Shown here: positions 8,619-61,614 of the stretch, piece by piece
Layout: every line of letters begins with the position of its first letter
How positions within the stretch are numbered: the first letter of the stretch is position 1
Virus record (IMG/VR): IMGVR_UViG_3300042350_004191
Coordinates: 124,001 to 188,000 of that record
Reading direction: 5' to 3' (one strand)
DNA: 64,000 nucleotides
Position numbers and translations under genes: made by a program
Notes under the pieces: generated by a model
What the model saw: the letters and a program-made list of their open reading frames with translations, nothing else
Told to the model about the DNA's origin: nothing
Database searches by the model: none

Positions 8619-9099
8619 ACAATCTTTCTTTGTTTTTTTCTAAAAATTCTTCTAATGATTGGATTAAATAACGGTTTTGATATATATGGTAATTTTCTTT
8701 ATATAAATCTGAAGAAAATTTGGTCATATCATAAACAACAAATATTCCTTTATTATTTATTTTAAAATATAACAACCACTTAGATTTTTGGGTTTCCGAT
8801 GCTTGTTTAATCCATCCATCCAACAAAGCATTTTGACCCAAAAACAAACCACTAAACGAGAAATCTTTATAGGATTTACATTCCATAGAGATGTGACTTA
8901 ATTCTGATGGAACGATAATATCACCATCAGCCAAAAGTTTTTGCTCCTCTGTCAGGGTTTCATACCGAAAAGCGTTTTTACCGCCCACATAGGCTCCAGA
9001 ATTGGGTATTCTTTGAAAGTTTAGACCAAAGGTTTTACTTAATATTTCACAAATCTGTCTTTCGAATGCTTTCCCTTTATTTTTGTTTTTGTTTGCCAT
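8608..9099 (-). CDS. Holliday junction resolvase-like PD-(D/E)XK nuclease
   Basis: KGKAFERQI...FQRIPNSGA...GDIIVP...MECKSY, Hjc-type motif order. Confidence 0.75.
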   Translation of the reverse strand: MANKNKNKGKAFERQICEILSKTFGLNFQRIPNSGAYVGGKNAFRYETLTEEQKLLADGDIIVPSELSHISMECKSYKDFSFSGLFLGQNALLDGWIKQASETQKSKWLLYFKINNKGIFVVYDMTKFSSDLYKENYHIYQNRYLIQSLEEFLEKNKERLYEQ

Positions 9100-9361
9100 T
9101 TTTCTTTTTCTTTAATTTGTTTTTTGATAGCTTTGGTAGTTTTAAATTTTTATTGGATAAAGATTGTTGATTAATAAGTTCAGGAAAGTTTCTTTTCTGT
9201 ATAGCACCCTTAAAAGGTAATCCATGGTAGCCCGTAGAATAAGAATCTTGATTTTGTAATTGATTACCAGTTTGTATAGAAGCTGATGGTAATGAACCAT
9301 AAACACCAGCAACATCCATTTCTTCTATAACACTTAAAATAATTTGTTGTAATTCATTCAT
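9077..9361 (-). CDS. Hypothetical protein with basic C-terminus
   Basis: 94-aa ORF divergent from uvsY; TATAAT 6 nt upstream. Confidence 0.6.
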   Translation of the reverse strand: MNELQQIILSVIEEMDVAGVYGSLPSASIQTGNQLQNQDSYSTGYHGLPFKGAIQKRNFPELINQQSLSNKNLKLPKLSKNKLKKKKNGKQKQK

Positions 9362-9381: not shown

Positions 9382-9777
9382 ATGGATAATTTGTTCGAAG
9401 AGTATGAAAAAGAAATATTTTCTGATACAAAAATTGACGAATTAAATCTTTTAGAAAAACAATTACAGTTACCAGCCATAAAACATAAATGGGTTGCAAG
9501 ATTAATTACCCACAAAAGGAAAGTAAACAATCTTGAGAAAAAAAGAAAAGAGATTAAAGAAATAGTTTTATCTAAAATGAGCGATATCCCCAAAGGAATA
9601 CCAAAAAAATTATTAGATGCTAAAATTGACACAACCGAAGAGATTCAAAAGATAGACGAAGAAATAGAAAAACATAGTATAATGATAGAATATTTGGAAA
9701 AAGTTGAACAAATATTTAAATCTATGAGTTACGATCTTAAAAATATTATAGATATTAATAAATTAGAAACTACATGA
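9382..9777 (+). CDS. uvsY: UvsY-like recombination mediator
   Basis: 131-aa helical protein, D.KIDELNL...QLPAIKHKW...IEYLEKV...MSYDLKNIID; directly upstream of uvsW. Confidence 0.75.
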   Translation: MDNLFEEYEKEIFSDTKIDELNLLEKQLQLPAIKHKWVARLITHKRKVNNLEKKRKEIKEIVLSKMSDIPKGIPKKLLDAKIDTTEEIQKIDEEIEKHSIMIEYLEKVEQIFKSMSYDLKNIIDINKLETT

Positions 9778-13744: not shown

Positions 13745-13749
13745 ATTAT

Positions 13750-16003: not shown

Positions 16004-16805
16004 AAATTTAGGAAAACATGGAGAATTCGGAAACCAGCTATTTCAAATAGCTGCTGTTATAGGTACTGCCATCAAAAACAATACAGTTTTTAATTTTCCG
16101 AAATGGCAAGGTTTAATATCTGGAACAGAGTATTCAACATATTTTAAAAATCCAATTCCAGAATCAGTAAACATTAATGACCATTTTGATGTTTATATGG
16201 AGCCATCTTTTTCGTATAACGAGATACCATATCAGATGAATCAAAAATTAGACTTGTTTGGTTATTTTCAAAGCGAAAAGTACTTCTTACACTGTAAAAA
16301 TGAAATTATAAATTTTTTCGAACCTTCAGAATTAATTTTTAAAAAAATAAAAAACTTAGATTATAAAAACTCTGTGAGTTTACAATTAAGGTTTTATGAT
16401 AATAAAAGACAATATTCAAATCACCTTGTTATGAACGATCCTTCGTATGGTGATTTATATTATACAGTTGAAGAGAATATTCCATATTTACAACAAGCTA
16501 TAAATTTTTTTGGGAAAGATAAAAATTATTTTGTAACTACAAATAACTTTGAAAAGGCTAAACAAATGTTTGGTGCTTATAGTAATTTTTATTTTTTGGA
16601 AAAATATTCATATTTAGAACAGTTTTTTATACAAAGTTTGTGCGAGCACAATATTATTACAAATTCGTCTTTTGGGTGGTGGGGTGCTTGGTTAAATAAA
16701 AATTTACATAAAATAGTTTTTGCGCCTTGCTTATGGTTTAAGCCAAATCATAAATCCAAAGAAGAAAGTAAAGATTTATATCCTGAAACTTGGAAAGTTT
16801 TATAA
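15990..16805 (+). CDS. GT11 alpha-1,2-fucosyltransferase-like protein
   Basis: GEFGNQLFQ, GYFQSEKYF, CEHNIITNSSFGWWGAWLN, DLYPETW; HxRRxD replaced by QLRFYD. Confidence 0.85.
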   Translation: MITFRNLGKHGEFGNQLFQIAAVIGTAIKNNTVFNFPKWQGLISGTEYSTYFKNPIPESVNINDHFDVYMEPSFSYNEIPYQMNQKLDLFGYFQSEKYFLHCKNEIINFFEPSELIFKKIKNLDYKNSVSLQLRFYDNKRQYSNHLVMNDPSYGDLYYTVEENIPYLQQAINFFGKDKNYFVTTNNFEKAKQMFGAYSNFYFLEKYSYLEQFFIQSLCEHNIITNSSFGWWGAWLNKNLHKIVFAPCLWFKPNHKSKEESKDLYPETWKVL

Positions 16806-17704
16806 TGAGAAGTTTAGTAACAGGTGGACAAGGATTTATTGGAAGCGTTTTAGTAAAAAAGCTACTAAACGAATGTAAAGATGATGTGATTGTTATTGAT
16901 AATAACAGTTCAAATAACAAAAATAATTTTAATGTTAAAGGAGCCAAATATTACAATGTAGATTTAAATAATTTTGACAAAATATTTCCTTTATTTAAAG
17001 ACGTTGACAGGGTATTTCATTTAGCAGCAGACGTTTCTATAGAGTTTTGTAATAAAAATCCCAGAATATCAGGTATTAATAACTCTAACATAACTCTTAA
17101 TACACTAGAATGTTGTCGATTAAATAAAGTTAAAAAATACATTTATTCGTCAACTTCTGCTGTATATGAACAAAAAAATACTAAATTGAAAGAAACCGAC
17201 AATGTTCGTCCTTTAAATTTATATTCAGCATCCAAATTATTTGGAGAAAATTTATGTAAAATATATTACGACCTTTATGGTGTAGAAACAATTTGTTTGC
17301 GCTATTTTAATGTTTTCGGTTCTTCAATGAAGAAAAGTCCATATTCTTCTGTTTTAGTTAATTTTTTAAATAATGAGTCAGAAAATAAACCATTAATTGT
17401 ACATGGTAATGGTAAACAAACAAGAGATTTTGTATTTGTTGAAGATGTAGCACAAGCAAACATCATAGCATCAACACTAAAATTGAAAAAATATGGTAAG
17501 ATTTACAATATAGGTTCTGGTAAAAGCATGTCTATAATAGACTTAGCAAAAAAAATTTCAAATAATATTACTTTTGTAAAATCACGAAGTGGTGATATAA
17601 AGAATAGTTGTTCTGATATTAAAAGATTAAAAAAAGACTTTAATTGGAAACCTGAAGTGAAAATTGAAAAATGGTTAAATAAAATAATTAAAACAAATGT
17701 ATAA
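16805..17704 (+). CDS. NAD-dependent nucleotide-sugar epimerase/dehydratase (extended SDR, GalE/WbpP-like)
   Basis: VTGGQGFIG, FHLAA, SSTSAVY, YSASK, LRYFNVFG, GNGKQTRDFVFVEDVA; TAATG coupling to GT11 gene. Confidence 0.9.
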   Translation: MRSLVTGGQGFIGSVLVKKLLNECKDDVIVIDNNSSNNKNNFNVKGAKYYNVDLNNFDKIFPLFKDVDRVFHLAADVSIEFCNKNPRISGINNSNITLNTLECCRLNKVKKYIYSSTSAVYEQKNTKLKETDNVRPLNLYSASKLFGENLCKIYYDLYGVETICLRYFNVFGSSMKKSPYSSVLVNFLNNESENKPLIVHGNGKQTRDFVFVEDVAQANIIASTLKLKKYGKIYNIGSGKSMSIIDLAKKISNNITFVKSRSGDIKNSCSDIKRLKKDFNWKPEVKIEKWLNKIIKTNV

Positions 17705-18380
17705 TATAGGTTTATTAATAATAGCGACAAATAAATACATAGATTTTTTAAATCCTTTAATAAAAAGTACAGATAATTATTTTTTAAAAAATCAAAATGT
17801 GAAATATTTTATCTTTACGGATAAAGATATTTCTTTTTTAAAAAGTGAAAGAGAAATTGTAAAAATTCAAACTGAACACAAAGACTGGCCTTGGATGACT
17901 TTAGGTAGATATAAAATTTTTTGTGATAGTAAAAATTTATTATCTAAAATGGATTATCTTTATTATTGTGATGTAGATATGAAATTTGTAGACGAGGTTG
18001 GTGACGAAATTTTAGAACAAATAGTAGCTACACAACATCCAGCTTTACGAGAAACAAGAGGAACTCCAGAAACTAACACAAGTTCTTTAGCGTGTGTTTA
18101 TCCTCACGAAAATATGGAATATTTTGCTGGTGGATTTAATGGCGGTTCTGCTGAACAATTTTTAAAAATGTCTAGTATTTTGTCTAAAAATATAGAAATC
18201 GATTATTTAAATGGAATTATTGCTTTGTGGCATGATGAAAGTCATTTAAATAGATATTTAATAGATAATCCTCCTACAAAAATATTAAGTCCAAGTTATT
18301 GTTACGGGGAAAACATGGAACTACCTTTCCCTAAAAAAATTCTAGCTTTAGACAAAAATCATTTTAAAATAAGATCATGA
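17697..18380 (+). CDS. GT6 alpha-1,3-glycosyltransferase (ABO-transferase family)
   Basis: IATNKY, YFIFTD, YCDVDMKF (DxD), YFAGGFNGG, ALWHDESHLNRYL, KILSPSY. Confidence 0.92.
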   Translation: MYNIGLLIIATNKYIDFLNPLIKSTDNYFLKNQNVKYFIFTDKDISFLKSEREIVKIQTEHKDWPWMTLGRYKIFCDSKNLLSKMDYLYYCDVDMKFVDEVGDEILEQIVATQHPALRETRGTPETNTSSLACVYPHENMEYFAGGFNGGSAEQFLKMSSILSKNIEIDYLNGIIALWHDESHLNRYLIDNPPTKILSPSYCYGENMELPFPKKILALDKNHFKIRS

Positions 18381-19039
18381 AAAAAGGAGTTATACTATAC
18401 CATAACAACATACAAAAATTGTATGATAATAGATGGATTGATAAATGTATACATTCCATGGTAAATCAAACGGATAATGATTTTACTTTTTATGAATTAA
18501 ATTATAACGGAGATTCTAATTCAGTTGTTAAAAACAATTCACAAAAATTAAAATTTTGGTCAAAAAAAATGTCAAATTATGCAGAAGCTATGAATTTTTT
18601 ATTGGATAAATCGTTTAATGATGGGTGTGATTATGTTTTTAATACAAACTTGGACGATTATTATGCATTAAACAGAATATCATCACAATTAGATATGATG
18701 TTAGAACAAGATTTAGATATAGTGAGTAGCGATTTTTCTTACATACAAGAAAGAAAAGAAAATGGTATTTCAGAAGATGTCGTAATTTTATTTAAAAATA
18801 TTGAAAAAAATAATATTAAAGACAATTTAATGAAAAGACATAATGTTATTGCTCATCCATCCGTTTGTTATAATAAAAGATTTTGGTTAGATAATAATAA
18901 CAGATATGATATTAATAAGGTTCCGCAAGAAGATCTAGACTTATGGATTCGCTCAATAAATAATGGTTATAAGTTTGGAATACATGAAAAAGTGTTATTG
19001 TATTATAGAATACATGAAAAACAAAGCAGTCAATCATGA
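18377..19039 (+). CDS. GT2-family glycosyltransferase
   Basis: CIHSMVNQT, NLDDY...RISSQL, IAHPSV, EDLDLWIR, LLYYRIH. Confidence 0.8.
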   Translation: MKKGVILYHNNIQKLYDNRWIDKCIHSMVNQTDNDFTFYELNYNGDSNSVVKNNSQKLKFWSKKMSNYAEAMNFLLDKSFNDGCDYVFNTNLDDYYALNRISSQLDMMLEQDLDIVSSDFSYIQERKENGISEDVVILFKNIEKNNIKDNLMKRHNVIAHPSVCYNKRFWLDNNNRYDINKVPQEDLDLWIRSINNGYKFGIHEKVLLYYRIHEKQSSQS

Positions 19040-19707
19040 ATATATACAATTTTATCGAAAGTAATATAAACAAAAATTCAATTTTTTTTGAAATAGGATC
19101 TCATTTTGGTTCGGATACTCAAAAATTTTCTAAAATAACAAACAAATTACATTGTTTTGAACCAGATCCTAGAAATATAAAAATTTTTAAACATTTGAAT
19201 TCAAATGTACAATTAAACGAGTTTGCAATTTCTGATAAAGACGGTGTATCACAATTTTTTCTTTCTAGTGGCAATGTGTACGAATCAATGTATGGACCTA
19301 CAGAAAATGAATTAATAAACCAAAACGATTGGTCAGCCTCTTCGTCATTAATTTCTCCTAAAAATCATTTTAAAAAAACACCATGGGTTAAATTTGATAA
19401 TACTATAGAAGTCAAAACAAAACGCCTAGATACATATTGTATAGAAAACGATATTAACAATATAGATTTTCTTTGGATGGACGTTCAAGGAGCAGAACTA
19501 AGCGTTATAAAAAGTATGGGAGCCTTCAAAGATAAAATACATTACATTTATACAGAATACAGCAATGAAGAATTGTATGAAAACCAAGGAACTAAAGAAC
19601 AAATTATAGAATTATTGGGCAATTCTTGGAAAGTTTTGTGTGATTTTGGAGGCGATATTTTATTAGAAAACCAAAATTATGATATCAATTACAATACCAG
19701 CATATGA
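19036..19707 (+). CDS. FkbM-family methyltransferase
   Basis: FEIGSHFG, FEPDPRN, AISD, TKRLD, IDFLWMDVQGAEL, IYTE. Confidence 0.88.
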   Translation: MNIYNFIESNINKNSIFFEIGSHFGSDTQKFSKITNKLHCFEPDPRNIKIFKHLNSNVQLNEFAISDKDGVSQFFLSSGNVYESMYGPTENELINQNDWSASSSLISPKNHFKKTPWVKFDNTIEVKTKRLDTYCIENDINNIDFLWMDVQGAELSVIKSMGAFKDKIHYIYTEYSNEELYENQGTKEQIIELLGNSWKVLCDFGGDILLENQNYDINYNTSI

Positions 19708-20350
19708 AATGTGTGGAGTTGGTAGTTCTTTTTTAGAAAAAAATTTACAATTTTTAAGAGATCAAACTTTTAAAAATTTTGAAGTAGTTATATCAGATCA
19801 TAGTATTTCCGATGATATAAAAAATGTTTGTTCTTTATTTAAAGACTTGGACATAAAATATATTAGAAATGAAAAAGATCGTGGAAGTTCTTCGGCTAAT
19901 TTAAACAATGCAATACTTAATTCAAAATATGATATTATTAAATTTTTAATGCAAGACGAATATATTTTTGAGAAAAATACTCTGTTGGATATTAAAAATG
20001 CTTTTCAAAGTGAAAATGTTAATTGGGTTGCTGTAGGTTTTTATAATGGAAATATAGAAGACAAAAGAATACCTTATTATAATGATGCAGTTATATATGG
20101 AAACAATACAATCGGAAGTCCTAGTATTGTTTCCATAAGAAAAACCAAAGATTTAGAGTTATTTAATCCTGAATTGATATGGTTAATGGATTGTGATTAT
20201 TATAAGAGAATTTACAATAAATGGGGTCATCCATTTATTGTAAAAGATTATAAAATTTTCATAAATCACCACCAAAATCAAGTTACTAATATTATAGATA
20301 ATATAAGAAAAGAAAAAGAACATGTTTTTTTAAAAACAATATATAAATAA
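19679..20350 (+). CDS. GT2-family glycosyltransferase
   Basis: ISITIPAYE, QTFKNFEVVISDHS, NLNNAI, FLMQDE, IGSPS, LMDCDYY. Confidence 0.85.
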   Translation: MISITIPAYEMCGVGSSFLEKNLQFLRDQTFKNFEVVISDHSISDDIKNVCSLFKDLDIKYIRNEKDRGSSSANLNNAILNSKYDIIKFLMQDEYIFEKNTLLDIKNAFQSENVNWVAVGFYNGNIEDKRIPYYNDAVIYGNNTIGSPSIVSIRKTKDLELFNPELIWLMDCDYYKRIYNKWGHPFIVKDYKIFINHHQNQVTNIIDNIRKEKEHVFLKTIYK

Positions 20351-20355
20351 GCGAT

Positions 20356-20952
20356 ATGACAAGAACACAGATAATAAACGGATTAATTAAAAAAAATAAC
20401 TATAAAAGTTATTTAGAGATCGGTGTTAATACACCTGAACAACCTGGATATAACTGGTCCAGTGTACAAATAGATTTAAAACACGGTGTTGATCCATTTG
20501 TAGACACGACATTTAAAACTACATCTGATGATTTTTTTAAAAATTACATAAATCAAAAATATGATATTATTTTTGTAGATGGGTTACATTTGTTTGAACA
20601 AGCATATAAAGATATAATAAATTCTTTAAATAATTTAAACGAAAATGGGACTATTGTAGTTCATGACTGTAATCCAATTACTGAAATAACACAACGAAGG
20701 ATCAGGGAATCGAATGAATGGCATGGTGATGTTTGGAAAGCTATTTTAAAGTTAAGATTAGAAAATCCCGATGTTGATATTTCCACAGTAAATGCTGATG
20801 AGGGGTGTGCTATCATTAAAAAAGGTCAACAAACACTATTAGAAGTATCGGAAAATATAGCTGAAGTCTATGATTATTCTTTTTTAGAAAAAAATAGAAA
20901 TAAAATATTAAATTTGATATCTACTGATGAATTTATAAAAAAATATCTTTAA
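20356..20952 (+). CDS. Class I SAM-dependent methyltransferase (Methyltransf_24-like)
   Basis: YLEIGV, GVDP, TSDDFF, YDIIFVDGLH, GTIVVHDCNP, WHGDVWK. Confidence 0.85.
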   Translation: MTRTQIINGLIKKNNYKSYLEIGVNTPEQPGYNWSSVQIDLKHGVDPFVDTTFKTTSDDFFKNYINQKYDIIFVDGLHLFEQAYKDIINSLNNLNENGTIVVHDCNPITEITQRRIRESNEWHGDVWKAILKLRLENPDVDISTVNADEGCAIIKKGQQTLLEVSENIAEVYDYSFLEKNRNKILNLISTDEFIKKYL

Positions 20953-53348: not shown

Positions 53349-56045
53349 TTAGTTGATTAATGCATCTAAGTCTGTACCAGTTCTGGTAGCAACGAAGTCA
53401 GCCAAGATAAATTCAGCGGCTCTAACAGGTTGAATATATATTGCAACTCTGAGTTCGTTTCTATCGATTGTGTCTGGTGTGTTATTTCTTTCATCACAGA
53501 TAATTCTGTAATCATAGATGCCTTCTCTTGTCTTTGCTCTTTCGAATAAAGGTGTTAATCTAAGAACAACTCTGTTTCTTGTTGTGATTGTATTTGGTTC
53601 AAATACAAATCTATTTAAGATAGTTGTTGTGCTCTTTTCTAACCATAAGAAGAGGTTTCTTACATTCAATCTATCGAATGCTGTTTGATAATTTATGAAT
53701 GTTTTTTGACCATAAACTACCATACCTTCTCTTGGGAAGTTAACGATAGGATTGTAGGAATGTCTATAAAGAAGATCTCTTTGTCTTTGATTTGGGTTGA
53801 GTGCTAGATCTACAACGCCAGTCAATCTTCCATAATTAAATCCTGCTGGAGCTAACCATGGTGCTCTTCTTCTGGTATTGAGGAGAACTCTACCAGCAAA
53901 GCCTGATGGTGGCAACCAAACAAATTCGTCTGAGGCTGCATCATAACGTCTCATCCAGTTTGCATATGTTGCCATGTATGTTGAGCGACCAATTTTTGCA
54001 TAAAGCACATTCAGAGGTCTTAAAACATCATCAACGAAGTTGAATGTTCTTGAATCGGCTATTTTAGCGTTTTTGCCTTTGACAAAAACATACCTCAATG
54101 GATCAGAAATAAATACGTGATTTTTTCTATTTTGTGCATAATTTCTGAATTTTCTCTGAACATCAACGTAAGCTTCTCTTACGACATCAAACTCTTGGTA
54201 ATAAGCTCTCCAGTTCTTAGGAATGACTTTAAGATTGTTGACATCGACATCTCTTGTGTCATCAAAGTGACCCGCGAGATCTGAACCAACATATGGGTTA
54301 AATCTTGCAGCACTTAATGCTACGTTTATTGTGCCTAAACCAGCTTCACAAACAATGTCTATGAATGTACTTTCATTTTCAGTTAATTCATATGTTTGGA
54401 AAACTCTGTCTAATTTAAGACTGAGATCACCAATATTTTTGTTTTTATTATCAACTGATGTAGGTGAGAACAGACTGTGACACCAAATAGCTTTGGTTCC
54501 TTCAGCAACTCTTACCTTCTTGACAGGTCTACCAAATTGATCGATCCATACGCCTGTTTCAGATATGTTAGGATTAGTTACAAATTTAATTCTAGAATTG
54601 AGATTATTTTCAATTCTATTTTCGATGTTGAAGCTAACTAATCTTCCACCGCGAGGGTCATTTTGCTTTCTCTTGGCATACAATGAACCAGCATATGCTT
54701 CCACTGTGCTATAATCTAAAGTTATAGCATCCTGAAGGAAAGGTGAAGTGTTTAATCTGTATACAAACAGTTTCAAGGAATCATTGAATGCATCATCTGA
54801 GAAATCATAAGCAGGGAATCTTGACATTCTTTCAGAAACACTTTGGAATGTTACACTTGAATAAGACTCTGTTAATGTGAAGTTTAATCTTTCATCAGGA
54901 ATTCTATAGAAAGACTGACCGACATTATTTCCAGAATTAACTGCGAAAATTGATGTTACAGAACTAAAATCTGTATAAGGAGTATCATCTGAATTATCTG
55001 CAAGGGCAATGTAAAACCCTTCAAACATATCATTAACCCCTAATTTATCACTGTTGATGATAACAATACCAGCCTTACTTAAATCTTCTGGGCCATTGAT
55101 TGTTAATGCGTTTAATGATCTCTTATCATGATAGTTAAGATCATATGATATTACAGTTCCTACACCATTACTGTTACTTGAAACATAATTTGTCCAAGAA
55201 CTTAATGTGTTTAAATCTGTGTTTACTGTTGCCCAAGCAATAGGAGCACCGCCAACCAAGTTTTTATCTAACTTGTTGGCATCATTTATAAGCCCATTGT
55301 CAGCAGCAACAATTCCATCAATATAATCTTGAACTCTTTGATTAAAGTATGCTTGGATATTGAATGCTGTTAAAGGTCTTTGTACTACTTGTTGGTTTGG
55401 TAAAACAGCAGGACCTTGATATGCATTAGGAGCATATGGGAAATATTTATTGACTTCAGAAACATCACTAACTCTTAAATCATTAACTACGTCTAAGAAT
55501 AAAGCACTAGCTACTGTTCTGTTTAAAGTGAAGGTTTGGTTTGCTACTGTTGATACAGAACTTACTTGTGTACTCCATGTTACACTTCCTTCTCTGATGT
55601 ATTTATCGTATTGATTTTGGTCAAATTTAACAGATTTAGGAGGAAGAATGTAATATGCTTCTGCATCAGAATAAGTTTTACCGTGTGGTAAAACTGGAAA
55701 TACTAAGGCACTATAATGATTCTGAGGATCTTCTTCTCCTCCATTGGCACCATAGGGCATTCTTGTTACATGAACATCAGAACCAGTACTAACCAATTGT
55801 TCTACAGTATGGGAGAGATAACGCTCTGCGGCTGTTTCAGGTAAGCCGAAAACGGTATTAAATTGAGCCATGCTTGTGATTCTAACAACTTGTTCAGTAG
55901 GACCCTGTGAAGCGAAACCAGTAACAACTGCGGCTGGTCTAATTGCTGCACCTCCTCCACTAGGTAGTCTTGTTAAGTCAGTTTCAGTAATTTGAACTCC
56001 GGGTGATTCAATTCTTCTTGGTGTTTGTATAATTCTTGTTGCCAT
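53349..56045 (-). CDS. 18: Contractile tail sheath protein gp18
   Basis: SPGVQITETDLT, GFASQGP, PWLAPAGFNYG, YGQKT, FDRLNVRNLF, FEPN, CDERNNT, IQPVRAAEFI. Confidence 0.95.
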   Translation of the reverse strand: MATRIIQTPRRIESPGVQITETDLTRLPSGGGAAIRPAAVVTGFASQGPTEQVVRITSMAQFNTVFGLPETAAERYLSHTVEQLVSTGSDVHVTRMPYGANGGEEDPQNHYSALVFPVLPHGKTYSDAEAYYILPPKSVKFDQNQYDKYIREGSVTWSTQVSSVSTVANQTFTLNRTVASALFLDVVNDLRVSDVSEVNKYFPYAPNAYQGPAVLPNQQVVQRPLTAFNIQAYFNQRVQDYIDGIVAADNGLINDANKLDKNLVGGAPIAWATVNTDLNTLSSWTNYVSSNSNGVGTVISYDLNYHDKRSLNALTINGPEDLSKAGIVIINSDKLGVNDMFEGFYIALADNSDDTPYTDFSSVTSIFAVNSGNNVGQSFYRIPDERLNFTLTESYSSVTFQSVSERMSRFPAYDFSDDAFNDSLKLFVYRLNTSPFLQDAITLDYSTVEAYAGSLYAKRKQNDPRGGRLVSFNIENRIENNLNSRIKFVTNPNISETGVWIDQFGRPVKKVRVAEGTKAIWCHSLFSPTSVDNKNKNIGDLSLKLDRVFQTYELTENESTFIDIVCEAGLGTINVALSAARFNPYVGSDLAGHFDDTRDVDVNNLKVIPKNWRAYYQEFDVVREAYVDVQRKFRNYAQNRKNHVFISDPLRYVFVKGKNAKIADSRTFNFVDDVLRPLNVLYAKIGRSTYMATYANWMRRYDAASDEFVWLPPSGFAGRVLLNTRRRAPWLAPAGFNYGRLTGVVDLALNPNQRQRDLLYRHSYNPIVNFPREGMVVYGQKTFINYQTAFDRLNVRNLFLWLEKSTTTILNRFVFEPNTITTRNRVVLRLTPLFERAKTREGIYDYRIICDERNNTPDTIDRNELRVAIYIQPVRAAEFILADFVATRTGTDLDALIN

Positions 56046-56057
56046 ATGTTATGAAAA

Positions 56058-56110
56058 TATTTATCTTATTTAAGTACCAATTTACGTAAAATTATAAAAA
56101 AATGTAAATA
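56058..56110. promoter_or_regulatory. Divergent late promoters
   Basis: - strand ATAAATA (56064-56058) 12 nt before sheath ATG; + strand TAAATA (56105-56110) 7 nt before ATG 56118. Confidence 0.6.
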
Positions 56111-56117
56111 GTAGTAT

Positions 56118-56441
56118 ATGAAATCATATAATGAACTTTATACACAGTTACTTAGTGAATATCAAAATACAAATACGGATGTCCAAAATCCCAATTTTTT
56201 AAAATTACAAAATTATTTTAAGCAACTTGGCCAAAATATCGATCCTAAAACTATAGAAGGAATTCTAAAAACATTGGAAGATAAATCTGAAAATGTTACG
56301 CAAAATACAAATGCAACAGAAAACGAAGAAGACCAAAATCAACCAGAAGTTCCAAAAGAAAAACAAACTTCCCCTAATGTTAGTCCAGTAATGAATAACC
56401 CATTGAACCCTTTCAATAAAAATCAACAAGCAACAGTATAA
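56118..56441 (+). CDS. Hypothetical late protein
   Basis: 107 aa, Asn/Gln-rich; late motif upstream. Confidence 0.65.
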   Translation: MKSYNELYTQLLSEYQNTNTDVQNPNFLKLQNYFKQLGQNIDPKTIEGILKTLEDKSENVTQNTNATENEEDQNQPEVPKEKQTSPNVSPVMNNPLNPFNKNQQATV

Positions 56442-56444
56442 ATA
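56437..56444 (+). promoter_or_regulatory. T4-type late promoter TATAAATA
   Basis: Exact consensus 6 nt before ATG 56451. Confidence 0.7.
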
Positions 56445-56450
56445 TAATAT

Positions 56451-56735
56451 ATGTTACCAGAAAATTTCGATAATTTAGTAACTGAGCTTTTGGAAGAAGC
56501 CAAATGCACAGGACCAACGAAAAAAGCTTCATCTACAGCCAAGGGTAAAAAGTGGATGAAGTGTGTAAAAAACCCAAGTGGTGGTGGATATAAAAGAATA
56601 CATTGGGGTCAAAAAGGTGTTCGTGTAACTGGTAAATCCGGTAACACAAAACGTAAAAAATCATTTCGTGCAAGACATAAATGCTCTGGAGCAAAGGCTG
56701 GCACACCACGTTACCAAGCGTGTAAAGATTGGTAA
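56451..56735 (+). CDS. Small basic Cys-containing protein
   Basis: GKKWMKCV...KRIHWG...KKSFRARHKC...RYQACKDW. Confidence 0.7.
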   Translation: MLPENFDNLVTELLEEAKCTGPTKKASSTAKGKKWMKCVKNPSGGGYKRIHWGQKGVRVTGKSGNTKRKKSFRARHKCSGAKAGTPRYQACKDW

Positions 56736-56743
56736 CTTCTTCA

Positions 56744-57544
56744 ATGAAGTCAAAAAAAAGTAAAAAGAAACAGACAGACTCTGTTCAAAAAAGCCATTCT
56801 CAAAACCGTGAGGATACTTCTCCTTATGTATACCAAAGAGAAAAAATTAATTTTGAATTTGGTATTAGGGAACTACCGTGGACAAATAAACAAAAAGAAC
56901 TAATTGAAGCTATTTTAGATAAACATACAAGATGTGTTTTTATTGAAGGGCCAGCAGGTACATCAAAGACATTAACTGCTGTTTATGCCGCACTGAACCT
57001 TTTGAAAAATAAAAAAATTTCTGACATAATCTTTGTAAGAAGTGCTGTTGAAAGTGCTGATTCTAAAATAGGTTATTTACCCGGTTCTATTGATGAAAAA
57101 TTTGAAGCGTATATGGTTCCCTTTATGGAAAAACTTGAAGAACTTTTAGATAAAGGTGCATTGAATAGATTAAGACATGACGAAAGATTTAGTGCAACGC
57201 CTGTGAATTATATCCGAGGTTTACATTGGGCAGCAAAAACGATCATCGTTGACGAAGCACAAAACATCACATTCAGAGAATTGGTAACAACTATTACTAG
57301 AATGGGTGAATTTTCAAAAATTATTTTTTGTGGAGATCCTATGCAATCAGATTTACCAGAAGCAAAAGCTGGTGGTTTTTCTAAAATGTGTGATTTATTT
57401 TCAGATGATGAATGTAAAAAATACGGTATTCATCATTTTAGATTTACAAATGAAGACGTTGTACGATCTGAGTTTGTGAAATTTATTGTTAATCGCCTTG
57501 AAAATGAAAAAGACACTTGGAAACCAAAAAATGTAAGTAAATAA
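56744..57544 (+). CDS. phoH: PhoH-family ATPase
   Basis: GPAGTSKT, RSAVE, IGYLPG, YIRG, IVDEAQN, TRMGE, GDPMQSD, DVVRS. Confidence 0.93.
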   Translation: MKSKKSKKKQTDSVQKSHSQNREDTSPYVYQREKINFEFGIRELPWTNKQKELIEAILDKHTRCVFIEGPAGTSKTLTAVYAALNLLKNKKISDIIFVRSAVESADSKIGYLPGSIDEKFEAYMVPFMEKLEELLDKGALNRLRHDERFSATPVNYIRGLHWAAKTIIVDEAQNITFRELVTTITRMGEFSKIIFCGDPMQSDLPEAKAGGFSKMCDLFSDDECKKYGIHHFRFTNEDVVRSEFVKFIVNRLENEKDTWKPKNVSK

Positions 57545-57548
57545 TAGA

Positions 57549-57719
57549 ATGGATCAAAATCAACAAAAAGTAGATTATAACAAAGTATCAAACAGACCAG
57601 TTACATGTATTTATTGTGGTGCTACAGTTGTAGGAAGAGTTCAAAAAACACCACAAGGAGAACAAATAAAGTGGATTTGTGATAGATGTAATCAACTAGT
57701 AAAAGTAGGAAATGTATGA
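57549..57719 (+). CDS. Small zinc-ribbon protein (56 aa)
   Basis: Not in ORF track. MDQNQQKVDYNKVSNRPVTCIYCGATVVGRVQKTPQGEQIKWICDRCNQLVKVGNV; TAAATA 5 nt upstream; ATGA overlap downstream. Confidence 0.75.
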   Translation: MDQNQQKVDYNKVSNRPVTCIYCGATVVGRVQKTPQGEQIKWICDRCNQLVKVGNV

Positions 57720-58120
57720 ATTTAAAGGATATTATTGAAGAAACTATTACGAATGCGGGTAGCATGAAAGCATATTCTGCTTATGAACAACCTGCTCGTA
57801 AAGACTTCATTCCTTTAAATCAATCAGATTATAATTTTCAATACAATCAAAATGTAAGACCCGGTGGAGAAAGACTTCCAGAACCACCTATACAAGGAGC
57901 CGTTCCTTGGCCTTTAGAGGGTGTTGTAGACGATTTTACTAGTAGTTATGTAAATCTCTACACCGCTGGTCAAAAAATCAATGCTTCAATAAAAGCTAAT
58001 AAGGCATTATCTGATAATCAAAAAGAAGAATTAAAAAAGTTTTTAAAAGATATTAAAACTATTTTAAATCATATAAAAACACTTGGGTCTAAAATAGTAG
58101 ACGTTTCCAAGATCAATTAA
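57716..58120 (+). CDS. Hypothetical protein
   Basis: 134-aa ORF. Confidence 0.7.
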   Translation: MNLKDIIEETITNAGSMKAYSAYEQPARKDFIPLNQSDYNFQYNQNVRPGGERLPEPPIQGAVPWPLEGVVDDFTSSYVNLYTAGQKINASIKANKALSDNQKEELKKFLKDIKTILNHIKTLGSKIVDVSKIN

Positions 58121-58128
58121 AAATTTTC

Positions 58129-58157
58129 TTGACCTTACAAGAAAATTCTAGTAATCT
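58129..58157 (+). promoter_or_regulatory. Sigma70-type promoter
   Basis: TTGACC-17-TAATCT, 8 nt before ATG 58166. Confidence 0.6.
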
Positions 58158-58165
58158 CGTTATAG

Positions 58166-58567
58166 ATGAAAAATCTTATAAGATCTATCTCTATTAATTT
58201 AATAGTTTCTGCTTTATTCGGATTGGCCAATGTACTGTTTGGTGGTAATTTTCTTTACGTATTTGCGTTTGCTTTTTTAATTCAATACGTACTTTACTCT
58301 GTAATAGCAACTATCATAATAAACTATTATAGAGAAAAAACAAAACAAATAGAATTAAATAAATTAGAAAATTTATCGACTATTCTTGAGTGTGCTTATT
58401 GTAAGCAAAAAAATTTATTAACATTTATACCTGAACAAAATGAAAGAACAGAGTTTATCTGTACTTCTTGTAATAAAGAAAACGCTGTGATTATTAATTT
58501 TACAGTTGCCAGAATCACAGATTCTTTGCCAATCAATTCACTTTTAACTGATGAAGACAAAAAATAA
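58166..58567 (+). CDS. Membrane protein with C-terminal zinc ribbon
   Basis: Two N-terminal TM helices; CAYC...CTSC. Confidence 0.7.
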   Translation: MKNLIRSISINLIVSALFGLANVLFGGNFLYVFAFAFLIQYVLYSVIATIIINYYREKTKQIELNKLENLSTILECAYCKQKNLLTFIPEQNERTEFICTSCNKENAVIINFTVARITDSLPINSLLTDEDKK

Positions 58568-58844
58568 AACTAAACAAACTAACATTGACCTGTCCGGTAA
58601 AAATATATACGAAGAAACTATGTATTATGCTAGATGGATAGCTTTATACGAAGCAATCAACATGATTGCTGAAGAAGCAAAACAGAGAAAAAAAGAGTTT
58701 GATGTTCTCAAACTTAGTCCAGTTAAGATTAAAAAATACATTTCTAGTGTAGAAGATCATATTCAAAAAAGACTTTTACAAGAAAAATTAGGTGTTGATT
58801 TTTATATTAAAGACAAAGATAAAGAAAAGACCTATTCTGTCTAA
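58551..58844 (+). CDS. Hypothetical protein
   Basis: 97-aa ORF. Confidence 0.65.
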   Translation: MKTKNKTKQTNIDLSGKNIYEETMYYARWIALYEAINMIAEEAKQRKKEFDVLKLSPVKIKKYISSVEDHIQKRLLQEKLGVDFYIKDKDKEKTYSV

Positions 58845-59470
58845 TAATCACCATAGACATTATCATTACTACAGGGGTTCTGTAGGTATGAAAAATTTTC
58901 TTGGGAGTCTTGTTCGATAGTATCATTGTCACTGACATTGGTATTATTTCCAACACCAGCACCGGGACCACCTGTTTCGTGGCTGTAATCATACCTACGA
59001 CCCTTGAAGAACCAAAGATAATGTCCAGCTATAGGATTTATTTGAAACTCGTCTATAACCTCTGTTAATTCAAATACATTAGCACCACGTTTCGGAAAGT
59101 GTATTCTATCAGCACCAAATTCTGTCAATTCAATAACATCACCAGCTTTGGGTTCACTACCGACACCAAATAATGCTTCAAACATTTCAGGATGAATAAC
59201 ACCATTTATATCACTATCGGCTACAATACCAAATTTAGAAAGAAGATATGAATCATTGTTAAGATTTAATAGAACAACAAGTTCTTTCCCTTCACCAAAA
59301 CCCGAAACCGTATCTTCACCATATAAATCGTCAGCAGAAGATAAAGAAGTTAAATTAGAAAAAAACTTAACTTCTTGACCAAACATTTCAATTTGTTCTT
59401 TGTTCCAACGATTGAAGTTTGACCTTTCGTTAGCATTAATTTTTTTATTTAAAAATCTAACCTTTTCCAT
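58841..59470 (-). CDS. 14: Neck protein gp14-like
   Basis: EQIEMFGQEV, DDLYGED, LLSKFGI, PKAGDVI, FELTEV, YDYSHE, NVYGDY. Confidence 0.75.
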   Translation of the reverse strand: MEKVRFLNKKINANERSNFNRWNKEQIEMFGQEVKFFSNLTSLSSADDLYGEDTVSGFGEGKELVVLLNLNNDSYLLSKFGIVADSDINGVIHPEMFEALFGVGSEPKAGDVIELTEFGADRIHFPKRGANVFELTEVIDEFQINPIAGHYLWFFKGRRYDYSHETGGPGAGVGNNTNVSDNDTIEQDSQENFSYLQNPCSNDNVYGDY

Positions 59471-59473
59471 ATT

Positions 59474-59827
59474 TTATTTTTTACGTACAACAAAATATTT
59501 TGTACCCTTTCTTACTAAAAATAAATCTGTTCTTCCTAGAGATTTTTTAAAATCACCAGTTTCTTTTTCTATATTTCGTCTAAAAATTTTTGCTAACTCT
59601 TTTGCTACTGTAAGTGGAATTTTATCAAATTTTAAATTTTTATTCATTTTAAATCTTTTGATAATATAATGTGATCGTTTAATATTATCAGAATCAGGAA
59701 CAAAATTTAAACCTTTTTTACGGTCTATCGTATTTCTATTTAAAGACTGTGTGTGTTTTCTAGAATTTTTTGTAGGTTTTACAATATCAGATTTTTGGTT
59801 ATAAAAATTTTTAAAGCTAGAAATCAT
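59474..59827 (-). CDS. Basic hypothetical late protein
   Basis: 117 aa Lys/Arg-rich; exact TATAAATA (59840-59833) 5 nt upstream. Confidence 0.65.
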   Translation of the reverse strand: MISSFKNFYNQKSDIVKPTKNSRKHTQSLNRNTIDRKKGLNFVPDSDNIKRSHYIIKRFKMNKNLKFDKIPLTVAKELAKIFRRNIEKETGDFKKSLGRTDLFLVRKGTKYFVVRKK

Positions 59828-59839
59828 ATATCTATTTAT

Positions 59840-59870
59840 AAAAAAACTCCATCTTTTCAGATGGAGTTTT
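59840..59870 (-). terminator. Rho-independent terminator, possibly bidirectional
   Basis: - strand AAAACTCCATCT-gaaa-AGATGGAGTTTTTTT. Confidence 0.85.
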
Positions 59871-59893
59871 CTTTTTTAATTTTTATTAATTAA

Positions 59894-60742
59894 TTATTTG
59901 TTGTCAATTATTCCTTTGCCAACATTTACTGCTGCTACTTTGTTATTTTTGTTTTGTAAAGATTTTCCAGCAGAATCACTTTGTTTTGTTAATTCGCCTT
60001 TGAATCCTTTACCAGTAGAAGGAACTTGAGCTTTCTTTTTATGAGCCTTGATTGTGCTCTTAACAACGTTATTAGAAGGTTTGTTCATTCCTTTAAGAAG
60101 TTTTTCTTGGTCAACCAATGCATGACCAACGACTTCTGCATCAACCTCTTCTTTAACGGTTTCTTCTTCGTCTTCAGATTCTTCATTTTCTTCGTCAGAA
60201 GCACCGAAATCAAATTCTTCATCTTCAGATTCTTCATTTTCAGATTCTTCGTCTTCAGATTCACCGCCAATAGCAGTTTGAAGAACGTCGATAAGTTTTT
60301 GGGCAGTTTCTTTATCAAGGGTAAGAGTTACTTCTTCAGATTCTTCTTCTTCTTCTTCAGATTCTTCTTCAGACTCATCAGAATTTTCGAGTGAAGGAAC
60401 TTCATTGTCGATTTCTCCCATACCATTATCACTACCATTTTCAATTTCCCATCCAAAAGCGTCTTCTTGAAGAATTTTGTTATACAAATCTTCAAAAGGA
60501 TTAGCAGCTTCTTTATAGGTAGGAGCTTTTTCTAAAGCACCGTCTTTTTCACCTTTTTCGTCACTAGAATTTCTTTTATCTTCGACAGGTTTATCAAGAT
60601 CAACATTTACATCAGCTTCATCAGCTTTGTTAAGTTTTTCAGTGCCTTCAAACGAATTTCCTGTTTTTAAAGTTGTTTTAACAACACCAGTATCATTGCC
60701 TTCGTTTAAAACTTCTAAGTATTTTTCGGTTAATGGGTCCAT
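59894..60742 (-). CDS. Highly acidic late protein, possible prohead core/scaffold-type protein
   Basis: Glu/Asp tracts with basic C-terminus; TAAATA upstream, terminator downstream. Confidence 0.6.
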   Translation of the reverse strand: MDPLTEKYLEVLNEGNDTGVVKTTLKTGNSFEGTEKLNKADEADVNVDLDKPVEDKRNSSDEKGEKDGALEKAPTYKEAANPFEDLYNKILQEDAFGWEIENGSDNGMGEIDNEVPSLENSDESEEESEEEEEESEEVTLTLDKETAQKLIDVLQTAIGGESEDEESENEESEDEEFDFGASDEENEESEDEEETVKEEVDAEVVGHALVDQEKLLKGMNKPSNNVVKSTIKAHKKKAQVPSTGKGFKGELTKQSDSAGKSLQNKNNKVAAVNVGKGIIDNK

Positions 60743-60768
60743 AATTTTTGTTTGTAATAATATTTACT

Positions 60769-61614
60769 CTATTTAGGTACATTTTCATCAAAAAATGACT
60801 CTTTGTTTAAAATAAACTCTGCTTCCTTTTCCAAATCCAACGGTTTGATTATTTGATAATCTTTATTTTCAGGAAACCATACGATGTATAAGTCATCTAC
60901 TTTATAACCAGAATTTTTTTCGACTATTTTTTTATAAATGTGTAATTGTAAAGAATATTTACTCAACTCACAATCTTGTAAATGAGACAAACCATTTAGC
61001 ATAGTTTTTCCGTTGAATCCTTCAGTTTTGATCGATTGGTTGGTTTTATAATCAAAAATAGATAAGTTTTTTGTTTTTCTATTATATGAAAGATTATCAA
61101 TTGTACCACAAATTTTACTACCAACATCACCTACAACAAATTCTGATCTTATACAATAATATGATTCATCATACCATTTATAAAAATTTAAAAAGTTTTT
61201 AACCATGAAACGCATCGTTTCTCGATACTGTTCTTTCTTTTTTTCAGCATCCAATTCTTGCCCTTCTTGAAAAAGCATATAATGAAACCCGTCCATATCT
61301 AAAGACACAAATTTTTTATTTAAAAAGTTTTCAACATATTTGTGAAAATCAGTTCCTTTAAAACAAGCATATTCTTTTTTGAAATTCCATTCTTTTAAAA
61401 TATCTTCTACAGGTCTTCCTTGTTTAAAGGCTACATTTTTAGCCACACCCGCAGAATCAAATTCTTCTGCATAATTTTTGAGAAGTGTCGTAACCGAATA
61501 TTTGCAAAGTTCTCCATTTATTTTATATTTGTGATCTTTCTCGTAAAATTTTACTTTTTTAAAAGTCTCTTCGAGAAGTAAAAGGTCATCAAAAGTTTTT
61601 ATTGCTTTTAGCAT
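60769..61614 (-). CDS. PD-(D/E)XK exonuclease (RecB-like)
   Basis: HKY, SVTT, KGTDFHKYVE, CGTIDNL, IFDYKTN, YSLQLHIY. Confidence 0.82.
   Translation of the reverse strand: MLKAIKTFDDLLLLEETFKKVKFYEKDHKYKINGELCKYSVTTLLKNYAEEFDSAGVAKNVAFKQGRPVEDILKEWNFKKEYACFKGTDFHKYVENFLNKKFVSLDMDGFHYMLFQEGQELDAEKKKEQYRETMRFMVKNFLNFYKWYDESYYCIRSEFVVGDVGSKICGTIDNLSYNRKTKNLSIFDYKTNQSIKTEGFNGKTMLNGLSHLQDCELSKYSLQLHIYKKIVEKNSGYKVDDLYIVWFPENKDYQIIKPLDLEKEAEFILNKESFFDENVPK

What the first reader, a model, noticed from the sequence alone, without database searches (positions are those of the whole stretch)
56118..60742. Shared N-terminal motif on small late proteins: candidate capsid-targeting/protease cleavage signal
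Seen: unrelated ORFs start with a similar amphipathic helix ending in (L/I/V)(L/I)xE: MKSYNELYTQLLSE (56118), MLPENFDNLVTELLEE (56451), MNLKDIIEE (57716), MDPLTEKYLEVLNE plus internal PFEDLYNKILQE (60742-), and MNELQQIILSVIEE (9361-). MISSFKNFY (59827-) is a weaker match. Most have late promoter motifs. Known: T4 internal proteins carry a ~10-aa capsid-targeting sequence cleaved after (L/I)xE by gp21. Inference: a set of packaged, possibly injected proteins. Two become very basic after cleavage and could be DNA-binding or anti-defence factors.
Basis: partly seen in the sequence, partly recalled or inferred. Interest (0 to 1): 0.6.

Follow-up and report, generated by a model that had tools for sequence, protein, structure and literature searches.

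The report
Capsid-loading leader peptides on phage proteins
In this uncultured T4-like lake phage, unrelated late proteins start with short helical leaders ending in a protease-type (L/I/V)-x-Glu site; these most likely load the proteins into the capsid, as T4's internal-protein signal does, and a stronger 20-residue version elsewhere in the genome tags hundreds of protein families in related phages.

Summary
All six N-termini are at the stated coordinates. N-terminal [LIV][LI]xE is enriched genome-wide: 33 of 245 genes against 10.4±3.0 in shuffles.

The window belongs to a 210.6-kb lake T4-like myovirus with an S77 (gp21-type) prohead protease and a gp22-like scaffold. Half of the scaffold's Glu residues have L/I/V at -2.

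Homologues in related genomes conserve the leaders of four window proteins:
- B (56451)
- C (57716)
- D (60742-)
- E (9361-)

B's homologues in non-T4 podophages lack the leader and begin where B's predicted mature protein begins. A (56118) resembles T4's MKTYQEFIAE but has no relatives. F has no cleavage motif.

The strongest signal lies outside the window. A 20-residue leader, M[KR]xKDQILLExAYxx[IV]LxE, sits on 9 genes here. It also sits on at least 456 protein clusters elsewhere, always at residue 1 and on unrelated bodies (GNAT, NUDIX, HD, nucleotidyltransferase).

Those bodies are depleted specifically in [LIV]xE (O/E 0.74 against 1.17). Control motifs are not depleted. This suggests the bodies are exposed to the protease.

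Packaging and cleavage are inferred, not shown. I rate it a new variant of the T4 capsid-targeting system.

The parts
56118..56441 (+). Protein A, 107 aa, acidic and Q/N-rich. Its putative 14-residue leader MKSYNELYTQLLSE is encoded at 56118-56159. The first 7 residues mirror the T4 IPII/IPIII leader MKTYQEF (Y4, hydrophobic residue at 7).
   Evidence: T4 ipII/ipIII sequences. It is an ORFan: only an identical copy exists in IMG/VR, so no conservation test was possible. The mature part has 0 [LIV]xE sites against 1.3 expected.
56104..56110 (+). Late-promoter-like GTAAATA, ending 7 nt before the ATG of A.
   Evidence: The same motif precedes the sheath, tube and protease genes.
56451..56735 (+). 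Protein B, 94 aa. The 16-residue leader MLPENFDNLVTELLEE is encoded at 56451-56498. The 78-residue mature part is Glu-free, has four Cys, is basic (pI 10.85) and resembles DUF5754.
   Evidence: The leader M(x)[KN]F[DNQ]xLVxxLLxE is conserved in 7 related genomes (M1, F6, V10 and L14 invariant), while the body is 50-85% identical. Homologues in a Flavobacterium podophage and in Roseobacter phage CRP-235 are 79-82 aa, lack the leader and start at the K-C that follows B's predicted cleavage site. ATAAATA lies at 56438-56444.
57716..58120 (+). Protein C, 134 aa. The 9-residue leader MNLKDIIEE is encoded at 57716-57742. It is followed by a disordered linker and a confident C-terminal helical hairpin.
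   Evidence: Six homologues keep M-x-h-x-x-h-h-x-E, with E9 invariant (MNLEKIIEE, MKLEKVINE, MIDLNKILNE, MNFEETLEE, MDVNKIFNE), and the next ~15 residues vary. The AF2 model has helix 3-15, residues 15-65 at pLDDT<50, and helices 67-131 at pLDDT ~90. C has no promoter motif of its own and overlaps the upstream ORF.
59894..60742 (-). Protein D, 282 aa, very acidic (pI 4.2). The N-terminal leader MDPLTEKYLEVLNE is encoded at 60701-60742. It may be a prohead-core component or cargo.
   Evidence: Homologues in 4 related genomes keep x-x-Y-L-x-h-L-N-E at the N-terminus. GTAAATA lies at 60761-60767. The gene sits beside the neck gene in conserved synteny.
60458..60493 (-). Internal second copy of the motif in D, PFEDLYNKILQE (residues 84-95).
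   Evidence: NPF[DE]xL[YF]NKIL is the best-conserved block of the D family. It is the only window sequence that scores against the class II leader HMM (6.4 bits). The Glu register shifts in two homologues (ILAQE), so it fits a binding helix better than an obligate cleavage site.
9077..9361 (-). Protein E, 94 aa. The 14-residue leader MNELQQIILSVIEE is encoded at 9320-9361. The mature part has pI 10.26.
   Evidence: Homologues start MNKFQQFIISILED (G003) and MFNKFQQLVSGLLKE (G002); compare T4 MKTYQEFIAE. ATAAATA lies at 9377-9383. No homologue was found in 5 further genomes.
59474..59827 (-). Protein F, 117 aa, basic (pI 10.67), starting MISSFKNFYNQ. It is not a credible cleavage substrate, though targeting without cleavage cannot be excluded.
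   Evidence: The SF-x-NFY block is conserved in G003 (MSFSNFYKTRN), but neither protein has [LIV]xE in its first 20 residues. ATAAATA lies at 59833-59839.
53349..56045 (-). Context: tail sheath gene, transcribed divergently from A.
   Evidence: tblastn gives 33-38% identity to the sheaths of T4-like Vibrio, cyano- and Pelagibacter phages.
58841..59470 (-). Context: T4 gp14-like neck / head-closure protein, immediately downstream of F and D.
   Evidence: phrog_679 head closure, E=4.8e-10; Pfam T4_neck-protein.
60769..61614 (-). Exonuclease starting MLKAIKTFDDLLLLEE. It matches the loose motif but is probably not a leader.
   Evidence: phrog_298 exonuclease, E=2e-25, with the match starting at residue 16. 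Homology with relatives begins at residues 8-9, and there is no promoter motif.

Best explanation
The N-terminal segments are propeptide leaders of the T4 capsid-targeting-sequence type. Each is a short amphipathic helix with an aromatic or aliphatic core ([FY]-x-x-h-h-x-E). The proposed mechanism has four steps.
1. The helix docks the newly made late protein onto the assembling prohead core (gp22-like scaffold, protease and core proteins).
2. The shell closes around the core.
3. The S77 prohead protease cuts after the Glu of (L/I/V)-x-E. This frees the mature protein inside the head.
4. The protein is later ejected with the DNA.

The genome uses two leader forms:
- Class I is 9-16 residues and T4-like. 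It fits B, E and A, with C as a short form. D carries the helix twice and may itself be a core component.
- Class II is 18-20 residues, M[KR]xKDQILLExAYxx[IV]LxE, with an L-x-E at residues 8-10 and usually another at 18-20. It occurs on 9 genes outside the window and is common in related lake phages, on enzymes and on small basic proteins.

Shown here: the motifs, their enrichment and conservation; their modular addition to unrelated bodies; the presence of the protease and scaffold; the scaffold's saturation with sites; and the avoidance of sites in leader-bearing proteins. Inferred: binding to the core, cleavage, residence in the virion and injection.
For: 1. Machinery. An S77 prohead protease lies at genome 67951-68622 (102 bits), and a head scaffolding protein lies next to it. 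The scaffold has the highest [LIV]xE density in the genome: 21 sites against 9.7±2.6 in shuffles, p=3e-4. In it, 51-52% of all Glu have L/I/V at exactly -2, against 26% in the rest of the proteome. This matches the L/I-x-E specificity of T4 gp21 (PMC9026906). The MCP site WC[LI]EE|[AG] and the protease N-terminus Y-x-LLVE are conserved in 3 genomes.
2. N-terminal enrichment. It is 33 against 10.4±3.0. Class I leaders number 18 against 4.5 expected across three genomes.
3. T4 likeness. T4 ipII/ipIII start MKTYQEFIAE|A and ipI starts MKTFKEF...TITE|A. Here we find MKSYNEL.. (A), MISFKEFLLE|K and MNKFDSVIQE|A, and class II has L8-x-E10.
4. Modularity. The bodies are unrelated. The 121 class II proteins fall into 79 body families carrying GNAT, NUDIX, HD, PolyA_pol, GP88 and L5_gp82 domains. 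At least 456 clusters at 50% identity carry the leader, and it starts at residue 1 in 143 of the best 150. B's leader is absent from its podophage homologues.
5. Selection acts on the protein. Synonymous codons vary freely in the leader, and the reversed-pattern control gives 0 hits.
6. Co-occurrence. Nine of 10 large leader-bearing records encode S77.
7. Site avoidance. Class II bodies have [LIV]xE at O/E 0.74 (0.64-0.85), against 1.17 (1.12-1.22) in other proteins. [LIV]xD/Q/K/N, Ex[LIV], [LIV]E and [LIV]xxE are not depleted. The result replicates on an independent sample at 0.80 (0.68-0.92).
8. Late-type promoter motifs precede 5 of 6 reader genes and 7 of 9 class II genes.
Against: - There is no direct evidence that any of these proteins is in virions or is cleaved: no isolate, no proteome and no RNA runs.
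- A is an ORFan. F lacks the motif.
- P1' after the Glu is variable (A, S, T, G, K, Y, M), whereas T4 strongly prefers Ala.
- Site depletion in D is not consistent among its homologues, and several class I proteins have more sites than expected.
- The late-promoter assignment is by analogy only.
- N-terminal helices can be conserved for structural reasons.
- The complex prediction could not be run.
Confidence: 0.6

Rival explanations
1. The leaders are a shared interaction tag for some other late process. Examples are recruitment to a phage hub or chaperone, oligomerisation, or localisation in the cell. On this view they are not removed by the prohead protease and the proteins are not packaged.
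For: Only sequence evidence is available. The conserved part of class II (residues 1-17) is longer than a cleavage site needs. D's internal block keeps the helix but not the Glu register. P1' is not T4-like.
Against: This does not explain the motif-specific depletion of [LIV]xE in leader-bearing bodies. It also does not explain the invariant Glu at the end of the leaders of C and B, the positional match of class II L8/E10 to the processing residues 8 and 10 of the T4 CTS, or the similar Y-x-LLVE on the protease itself.
Confidence: 0.17
2. The window's six N-termini are ordinary amphipathic N-terminal helices of an AT-rich genome. Their resemblance would then come from composition and a loose pattern, and only the class II family outside the window would be a real signal.
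For: The exonuclease at 60769-61614 also matches it, probably by chance. A has no homologues. The class II HMM misses these proteins. N-termini are slightly richer in K, L and I.
Against: Shuffling within the N-termini controls for composition and still gives 33 against 10.4. Without the 9 class II genes the count is 24, still about 4.5 SD above the mean. The leaders of B, C, D and E are conserved while the flanking residues drift. B's leader is absent in podophage homologues. The motif associates with the late-promoter motif. The mature parts of A-E hold 3 [LIV]xE sites against 10.8 expected.
Confidence: 0.12
3. The shared 5' ends are nucleotide-level elements rather than peptide signals. They could be translation enhancers for near-leaderless late mRNAs, or recombination cassettes that shuffle genes.
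For: The promoter-like motifs end only 5-27 nt before the ATG and there is no Shine-Dalgarno sequence. Class II genes cluster in variable regions.
Against: Leader codons vary synonymously throughout (AAA/AAG, ATT/ATA/ATC, TTA/CTA/CTT/TTG, GAA/GAG, TAT/TAC) while the peptide is invariant at M1, K4, D5, L9, E10 and Y13. Conservation extends 60 nt into the ORF in one frame only.
Confidence: 0.03
4. The leader is an N-terminal degron, or a timing signal read by a host protease, that limits the lifetime of late accessory proteins.
For: N-terminal recognition tags for AAA+ proteases exist (general knowledge). Nothing found here supports this specifically.
Against: It gives no reason for avoiding [LIV]xE in the bodies, and none for co-occurrence with S77 or resemblance to the T4 CTS.
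Confidence: 0.03

Closest known systems
T4 capsid targeting sequence (CTS) of internal proteins IPI, IPII, IPIII and Alt (Mullaney & Black 1996; reviewed in PMC9026906, PMC5694885)
   Same: Both are 10-20-residue propeptides at the extreme N-terminus of otherwise unrelated proteins. Both end in (L/I)-x-E, which a gp21/S77 prohead protease cuts. Both have an aromatic residue at position ~4 and a hydrophobic one at ~7 (T4 MKTYQEFIAE / MKTFKEF; here MKSYNEL, MISFKEFLLE, MNKFDSVIQE, MNKFQQFII). Both are linked to late expression and include basic or enzyme cargo.
   Different: The mature parts have no sequence homology to the T4 proteins. The dominant leader here (class II) has its own 20-residue consensus with K4-D5 and Y13. 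P1' is not restricted to Ala. The scale is far larger: about 20 candidate genes in this genome and at least 456 protein clusters in metagenomes, against 4 in T4. The function here is untested.
Propeptides of ejection / inner-body proteins of phiKZ-like giant phages (phiKZ, 201phi2-1, SPN3US)
   Same: A diverged gp21-type protease cuts many head proteins after Glu in a short motif. The propeptides are thought to target proteins into the prohead, and paralogues share identical N-termini (PMC5694885).
   Different: The giant-phage motif is S/A-x-E, and the propeptides are often longer than 100 residues. Here the motif is L/I/V-x-E, as in T4, and the leaders are 9-20 residues.
Encapsulin cargo-loading peptides (from my own knowledge, not tested here)
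   Same: A short terminal peptide, appended to diverse enzymes, directs them into an HK97-fold shell.
   Different: These peptides are usually C-terminal, bind the shell protein directly and are not removed by a protease. The system is cellular rather than a virion.

Membership tests
T4-type CTS / internal-protein system | A propeptide of about 10-20 residues at the extreme N-terminus | tested here: met
   The leaders of A-E are 9-16 residues and start at Met1. The class II leader starts at residue 1 in 143 of the best 150 representatives.
T4-type CTS / internal-protein system | The propeptide ends in the gp21 cleavage motif (L/I)-x-E | tested here: met
   A ends LSE, B LEE, C IEE, D LNE and E IEE, and the site is conserved in homologues of B, C, D and E. 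F does not meet this. Class II has LLE at residues 8-10, and 81 of 121 proteins have a second h-x-E ending at 18-20.
T4-type CTS / internal-protein system | The phage encodes a gp21 (S77) prohead protease and a gp22-type scaffolding core | tested here: met
   PF03420 scores 102 bits. phrog_237 scaffold. The scaffold is enriched in [LIV]xE.
T4-type CTS / internal-protein system | Targeting determinants at residues 4 and 7 (Tyr4 and Phe7 in IPIII) | tested here: inconclusive
   A has Y4/L7. The E family has F4/F7 in G003. The B family has F at 3-6 and L/V three residues later. C, D and class II (K4, I7) differ.
T4-type CTS / internal-protein system | The same leader sits on unrelated mature proteins | tested here: met
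   No similarity between bodies. There are 79 body families among 121 class II proteins. B's leader is absent from its podophage homologues.
T4-type CTS / internal-protein system | Late transcription | tested here: inconclusive
   NTAA[AG]TA precedes 5 of 6 reader genes and the structural genes. There are no RNA data.
T4-type CTS / internal-protein system | The proteins are present in heads, with the propeptide removed | not testable with these tools
   The only indirect evidence is specific avoidance of [LIV]xE in leader-bearing bodies.
T4-type CTS / internal-protein system | The leader is sufficient to package a foreign protein | not testable with these tools
   This needs an experiment.
T4-type CTS / internal-protein system | Sequence homology of the mature proteins to T4 IPI, IPII, IPIII or Alt | tested here: not met
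   No Pfam or PHROG match to internal proteins. This is not a strict requirement, because IPs are hypervariable even among the T-even phages.

The most novel reading that the evidence does not exclude
A clade of about 200-227-kb freshwater T4-like phages uses one nearly invariant 20-residue leader, MKxKDQILLExAYxxILxE, plus T4-like short variants, as a general loading tag. The tag would place hundreds of unrelated proteins into the capsid for co-injection, including acetyltransferases, NUDIX and HD hydrolases, nucleotidyltransferases, HTH proteins and small basic DNA binders. If so, the injected effector and anti-defence repertoire of uncultured phages could be read directly from sequence, and the tag could serve as a portable packaging signal.
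Probability: 0.5. Interest if true: 0.8.

Novelty: new variant of a known kind. Interest (0 to 1): 0.68.

Why it matters
Proteins injected with the DNA are a phage's first move against host defences, yet outside T4 and a few giant phages they can only be found by virion proteomics of cultured isolates. A leader that is recognisable from sequence, backed by a cleavage-site-avoidance signature, would make the packaged proteome of uncultured T4-like phages predictable. It would also point to hundreds of candidate host-takeover and anti-defence proteins, and it would offer a second, well-defined tag for loading foreign proteins into T4-type capsids. Finally, it would show that the CTS mechanism, so far characterised essentially in T-even phages, is old and has expanded greatly in a distant lineage.

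Tried and rejected
- Megablast of the region against GenBank phages: no match.
- tblastn of A: no match. A has no homologue in 5 related genomes, and IMG/VR holds only an identical copy.
- tblastn of a 25-residue class II leader against cultured phages: nothing at E<=10, but the query is too short to be conclusive.
- The search for homologous proteins on residues 1-40 of a class II protein: only 3 close relatives, because the E-value bar is too high for a 20-residue motif.
- Strict T4 late promoter TATAAATA: only 11 genes, not predictive. I replaced it with NTAA[AG]TA.
- E: no homologue in five further genomes.
- AF2 model of B: low confidence (pLDDT 60), so I did not use it for fold search. 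C's confident part is only a helical hairpin, so I ran no fold search on it.
- Site depletion in D looked strong in this genome (2 against 8.2) but is not consistent in D's homologues (29 against 40 overall, and one homologue is enriched). I therefore do not use it as evidence.
- Literature: no paper in the library prints KDQILLE or LLEEAY in a phage context. CTS papers concern T4 and giant phages only.
- Sequencing runs: lake-water DNA only and no RNA, so I did not use read laying.

Full report
**Context**

The window is bases 124001-188000 of a single 210,586-bp IMG/VR virus record (32% G+C, about 99% complete). It is a distant T4-like myovirus:
- The tail sheath at 53349-56045(-) is 33-38% identical over its C-terminal third to the sheaths of Vibrio, cyanobacterial and Pelagibacter T4-like phages.
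- A gp14-like neck protein lies at 58841-59470(-).
- A PhoH gene lies at 56729-57544.

Outside the window the genome encodes an S77/gp21 prohead protease (PF03420, 102 bits; genome 67951-68622). Next to it are a head scaffolding protein (phrog_237) and the major capsid protein. No close cultured relative exists in the GenBank phage collection. The DNA is found in lake-water metagenomes.

**Observation**

I made my own gene call of the whole genome: 245 genes covering 89% of the sequence.
- [LIV][LI]xE with its Glu at positions 7-20 occurs in 28 N-termini. The whole-protein rate predicts 10.6, and equal-sized internal windows carry it in only 3-5% of proteins.
- With Glu at positions 7-22 the count is 33. 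Shuffling residues inside each N-terminus, which controls for N-terminal composition, gives 10.4±3.0, and none of 2000 shuffles reached 33.
- The bodies of 28 motif-bearing proteins show no pairwise similarity.

**The motif resolves into two leader classes**

It sits on nine genes at genome 1343, 7776, 12109, 13313, 39505, 39715, 40049, 43794 and 190097, all outside the window. I call this class II.

Class I is T4-like: M-x-[KN]-F-[DNQ]-x-h...h-h-x-E. It is enriched at N-termini in this genome and in two complete relatives that I fetched and gene-called: 6, 4 and 8 observed against 1.4, 1.5 and 1.6 expected.

The T4 record gives ipII/ipIII = MKTYQEFIAE|A and ipI = MKTFKEFTSTTTPVSTITE|A. The review PMC9026906 states three things:
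- The first 10 residues of IPIII suffice for packaging.
- Residues 4 and 7 matter for targeting, and residues 8 and 10 for processing.
- gp21 cuts after L/I-x-E.

Against that yardstick:
- A (MKSYNEL...LSE) matches the first seven positions conservatively.
- MISFKEFLLE|KRKR (genome 13083) and MNKFDSVIQE|A (genome 45140) are ten-residue look-alikes.
- Class II has L8-x-E10 in exactly the T4 processing positions, and in 81 of 121 proteins a second h-x-E ends at residues 18-20.

Synteny from the sheath to the exonuclease is kept in relatives G002 and G003.
- **B.** Seven genomes keep M(x)[KN]F[DNQ]xLVxxLLxE, followed by a body that is 50-85% identical. Homologues of that body in a Flavobacterium podophage and in Roseobacter phage CRP-235 are 79-82 residues. 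They lack the leader and start at the K-C that follows B's predicted cleavage site, so mature B (78 residues) equals their full length. This is the cleanest evidence that the leader is an add-on module.
- **C.** Six genomes keep a 9-10-residue M-x-h-x-x-h-h-x-E with an invariant Glu, followed by variable sequence. AF2 gives a short N-terminal helix, a 50-residue disordered linker and a confident helical hairpin.
- **D.** Five genomes keep the N-terminal Y-L-x-h-L-N-E. Even more strongly they keep the internal NPFDxLYNKIL block, which resembles the second half of class II. In two homologues the Glu register of the internal block shifts. I therefore read that block as a binding helix, and D as a possible core component.
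- **E.** Two homologues start MNKFQQFIISILED and MFNKFQQLVSGLLKE.
- **A.** An ORFan.
- **F.** It keeps SF-x-NFY but has no cleavage motif.
- **The exonuclease at 60769-61614.** It also matches the loose pattern but looks like a coincidence.

**Class II is widespread and modular**

- 162 of the 168 matches open ORFs of 40 residues or more.
- The match almost always sits at the start of its ORF.
- A single 14-kb locus holds up to seven matches.
- NTAAATA or TAAGTA usually lies just upstream.

Five complete 203-227-kb relatives each have 3-5 strict matches, against 0 for the reversed pattern. Their leader codons vary synonymously, so the peptide is what is conserved. Nine of ten large leader-bearing records encode S77; the exception is a 58%-complete fragment.

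The 121 distinct proteins fall into 79 unrelated body families. A few carry known domains: GNAT, PolyA_pol head, NUDIX, HD, GP88 and L5_gp82, plus HTH_17 in this genome. A profile of the leader found 456 cluster representatives (50% identity) among 1.84 billion proteins at E<=0.001. In 143 of the best 150 the match begins at residue 1. Neither Pfam nor PHROGs covers the leader, and no paper in the library prints it.

**Does the protease have T4-like specificity, and do these proteins meet it?**

- The scaffold has the highest [LIV]xE density in the genome: 21 sites against 9.7±2.6 in shuffles, p=3e-4.
- In three scaffolds, 52% of all Glu have L/I/V at exactly -2. Other offsets give 9-29%, and the rest of the proteome gives 26% at -2.
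- The 73-residue protein beside the protease, and the protease itself, are also enriched in sites.
- WC[LI]EE|[AG] in the capsid protein and Y-x-LLVE| at the protease N-terminus are conserved.

The bodies of class II proteins (residues 25 to the end) are depleted in [LIV]xE: O/E 0.74 (95% CI 0.64-0.85), against 1.17 (1.12-1.22) for other proteins of 60-400 residues in the three genomes. Seven control motifs are not depleted: [LIV]xD, xQ, xK, xN, Ex[LIV], [LIV]E and [LIV]xxE. The depletion replicates on the 134 bodies from the representative search, at 0.80 (0.68-0.92).

Motif-specific avoidance is what one expects of proteins that must survive next to a (L/I/V)-x-E protease. The rival explanations do not account for it easily.

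That figure is driven by D and is not consistent across D's homologues, so I give it little weight.

**Timing**

NTAA[AG]TA lies within 35 nt upstream of 66 of 245 genes, against 2.8% of random windows. It precedes the sheath, tube, baseplate and protease genes, 5 of 6 reader genes and 7 of 9 class II genes. It also associates with the N-terminal motif (Fisher p=0.0013). Early-looking genes instead have TTGACA...TATAAT. That this motif is the late promoter is an inference from T4.

**Conclusion**

The best explanation is a T4-type capsid-targeting and propeptide system with two leader forms.

My confidence in that mechanism for the set as a whole is about 0.6. It is higher for class II and for B, C and E. 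It is moderate for A and D, and low for F.

The kind of system is already known from T4. The new points are the distinct 20-residue leader, its scale, and its presence in a distant uncultured lineage.

Noticed in passing
L140:1357-3135 (-) (record G005, IMGVR_UViG_3300009185_000001); the same architecture occurs in G007: In two related phages the prohead protease ORF is 592-614 aa. Its S77 domain is split by an intein-like insert: Intein_splicing scores 35.7 bits, just under the cut-off of 35.8.
   Followed up: partly
window 56104-56110, 56438-56444, 59833-59839, 9377-9383, and genome-wide: The late-promoter-like NTAA[AG]TA ends only 5-27 nt before the start codon, and no Shine-Dalgarno sequence is present. 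Late mRNAs of this phage may therefore be leaderless or nearly so.
   Followed up: partly
proteins P0015, P0089 and P0006: Some class II proteins carry two leaders in tandem. One carries a second leader-like copy about 25 residues from its C-terminus, which recalls the C-terminal propeptide of T4 Alt.
   Followed up: no
genome 197326-197496 (L009:11326-11496, outside the window) and its G002 homologue: The body of a 56-aa basic protein (leader MNKSFETFFGEIIEE) is 87% identical to the C-terminus of a 128-aa G002 protein. There it follows a VVEE site, and the protein has a class I-like N-terminus (MKYDLLVSSYL). This suggests cargo swapping at cleavage sites.
   Followed up: no
genome 71607-72527 (L005:13607-14527), directly after the capsid gene: A 306-aa charged protein carries the leader MSLFKDFYTKVIQE|A, a second internal NLYKNILQE, and more [LIV]xE sites than expected (9 against 5.0). 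It is a candidate degradable core protein and has no homologue in G002 or G003.
   Followed up: partly
genome 39505-40420 (L004:1505-2420): Three consecutive class II genes form an operon-like row. The second and third share their first 13 residues but nothing else. Several class II and class I cargoes are tiny, basic, Cys-containing proteins with K-rich tracts and an NPWAVC motif.
   Followed up: no
window 13000-20400: A long run of same-strand genes of about 220-480 aa lies between replication-type genes. I did not annotate it; from the translated N-termini alone it looks like a sugar-modification or glycosyltransferase cluster.
   Followed up: no
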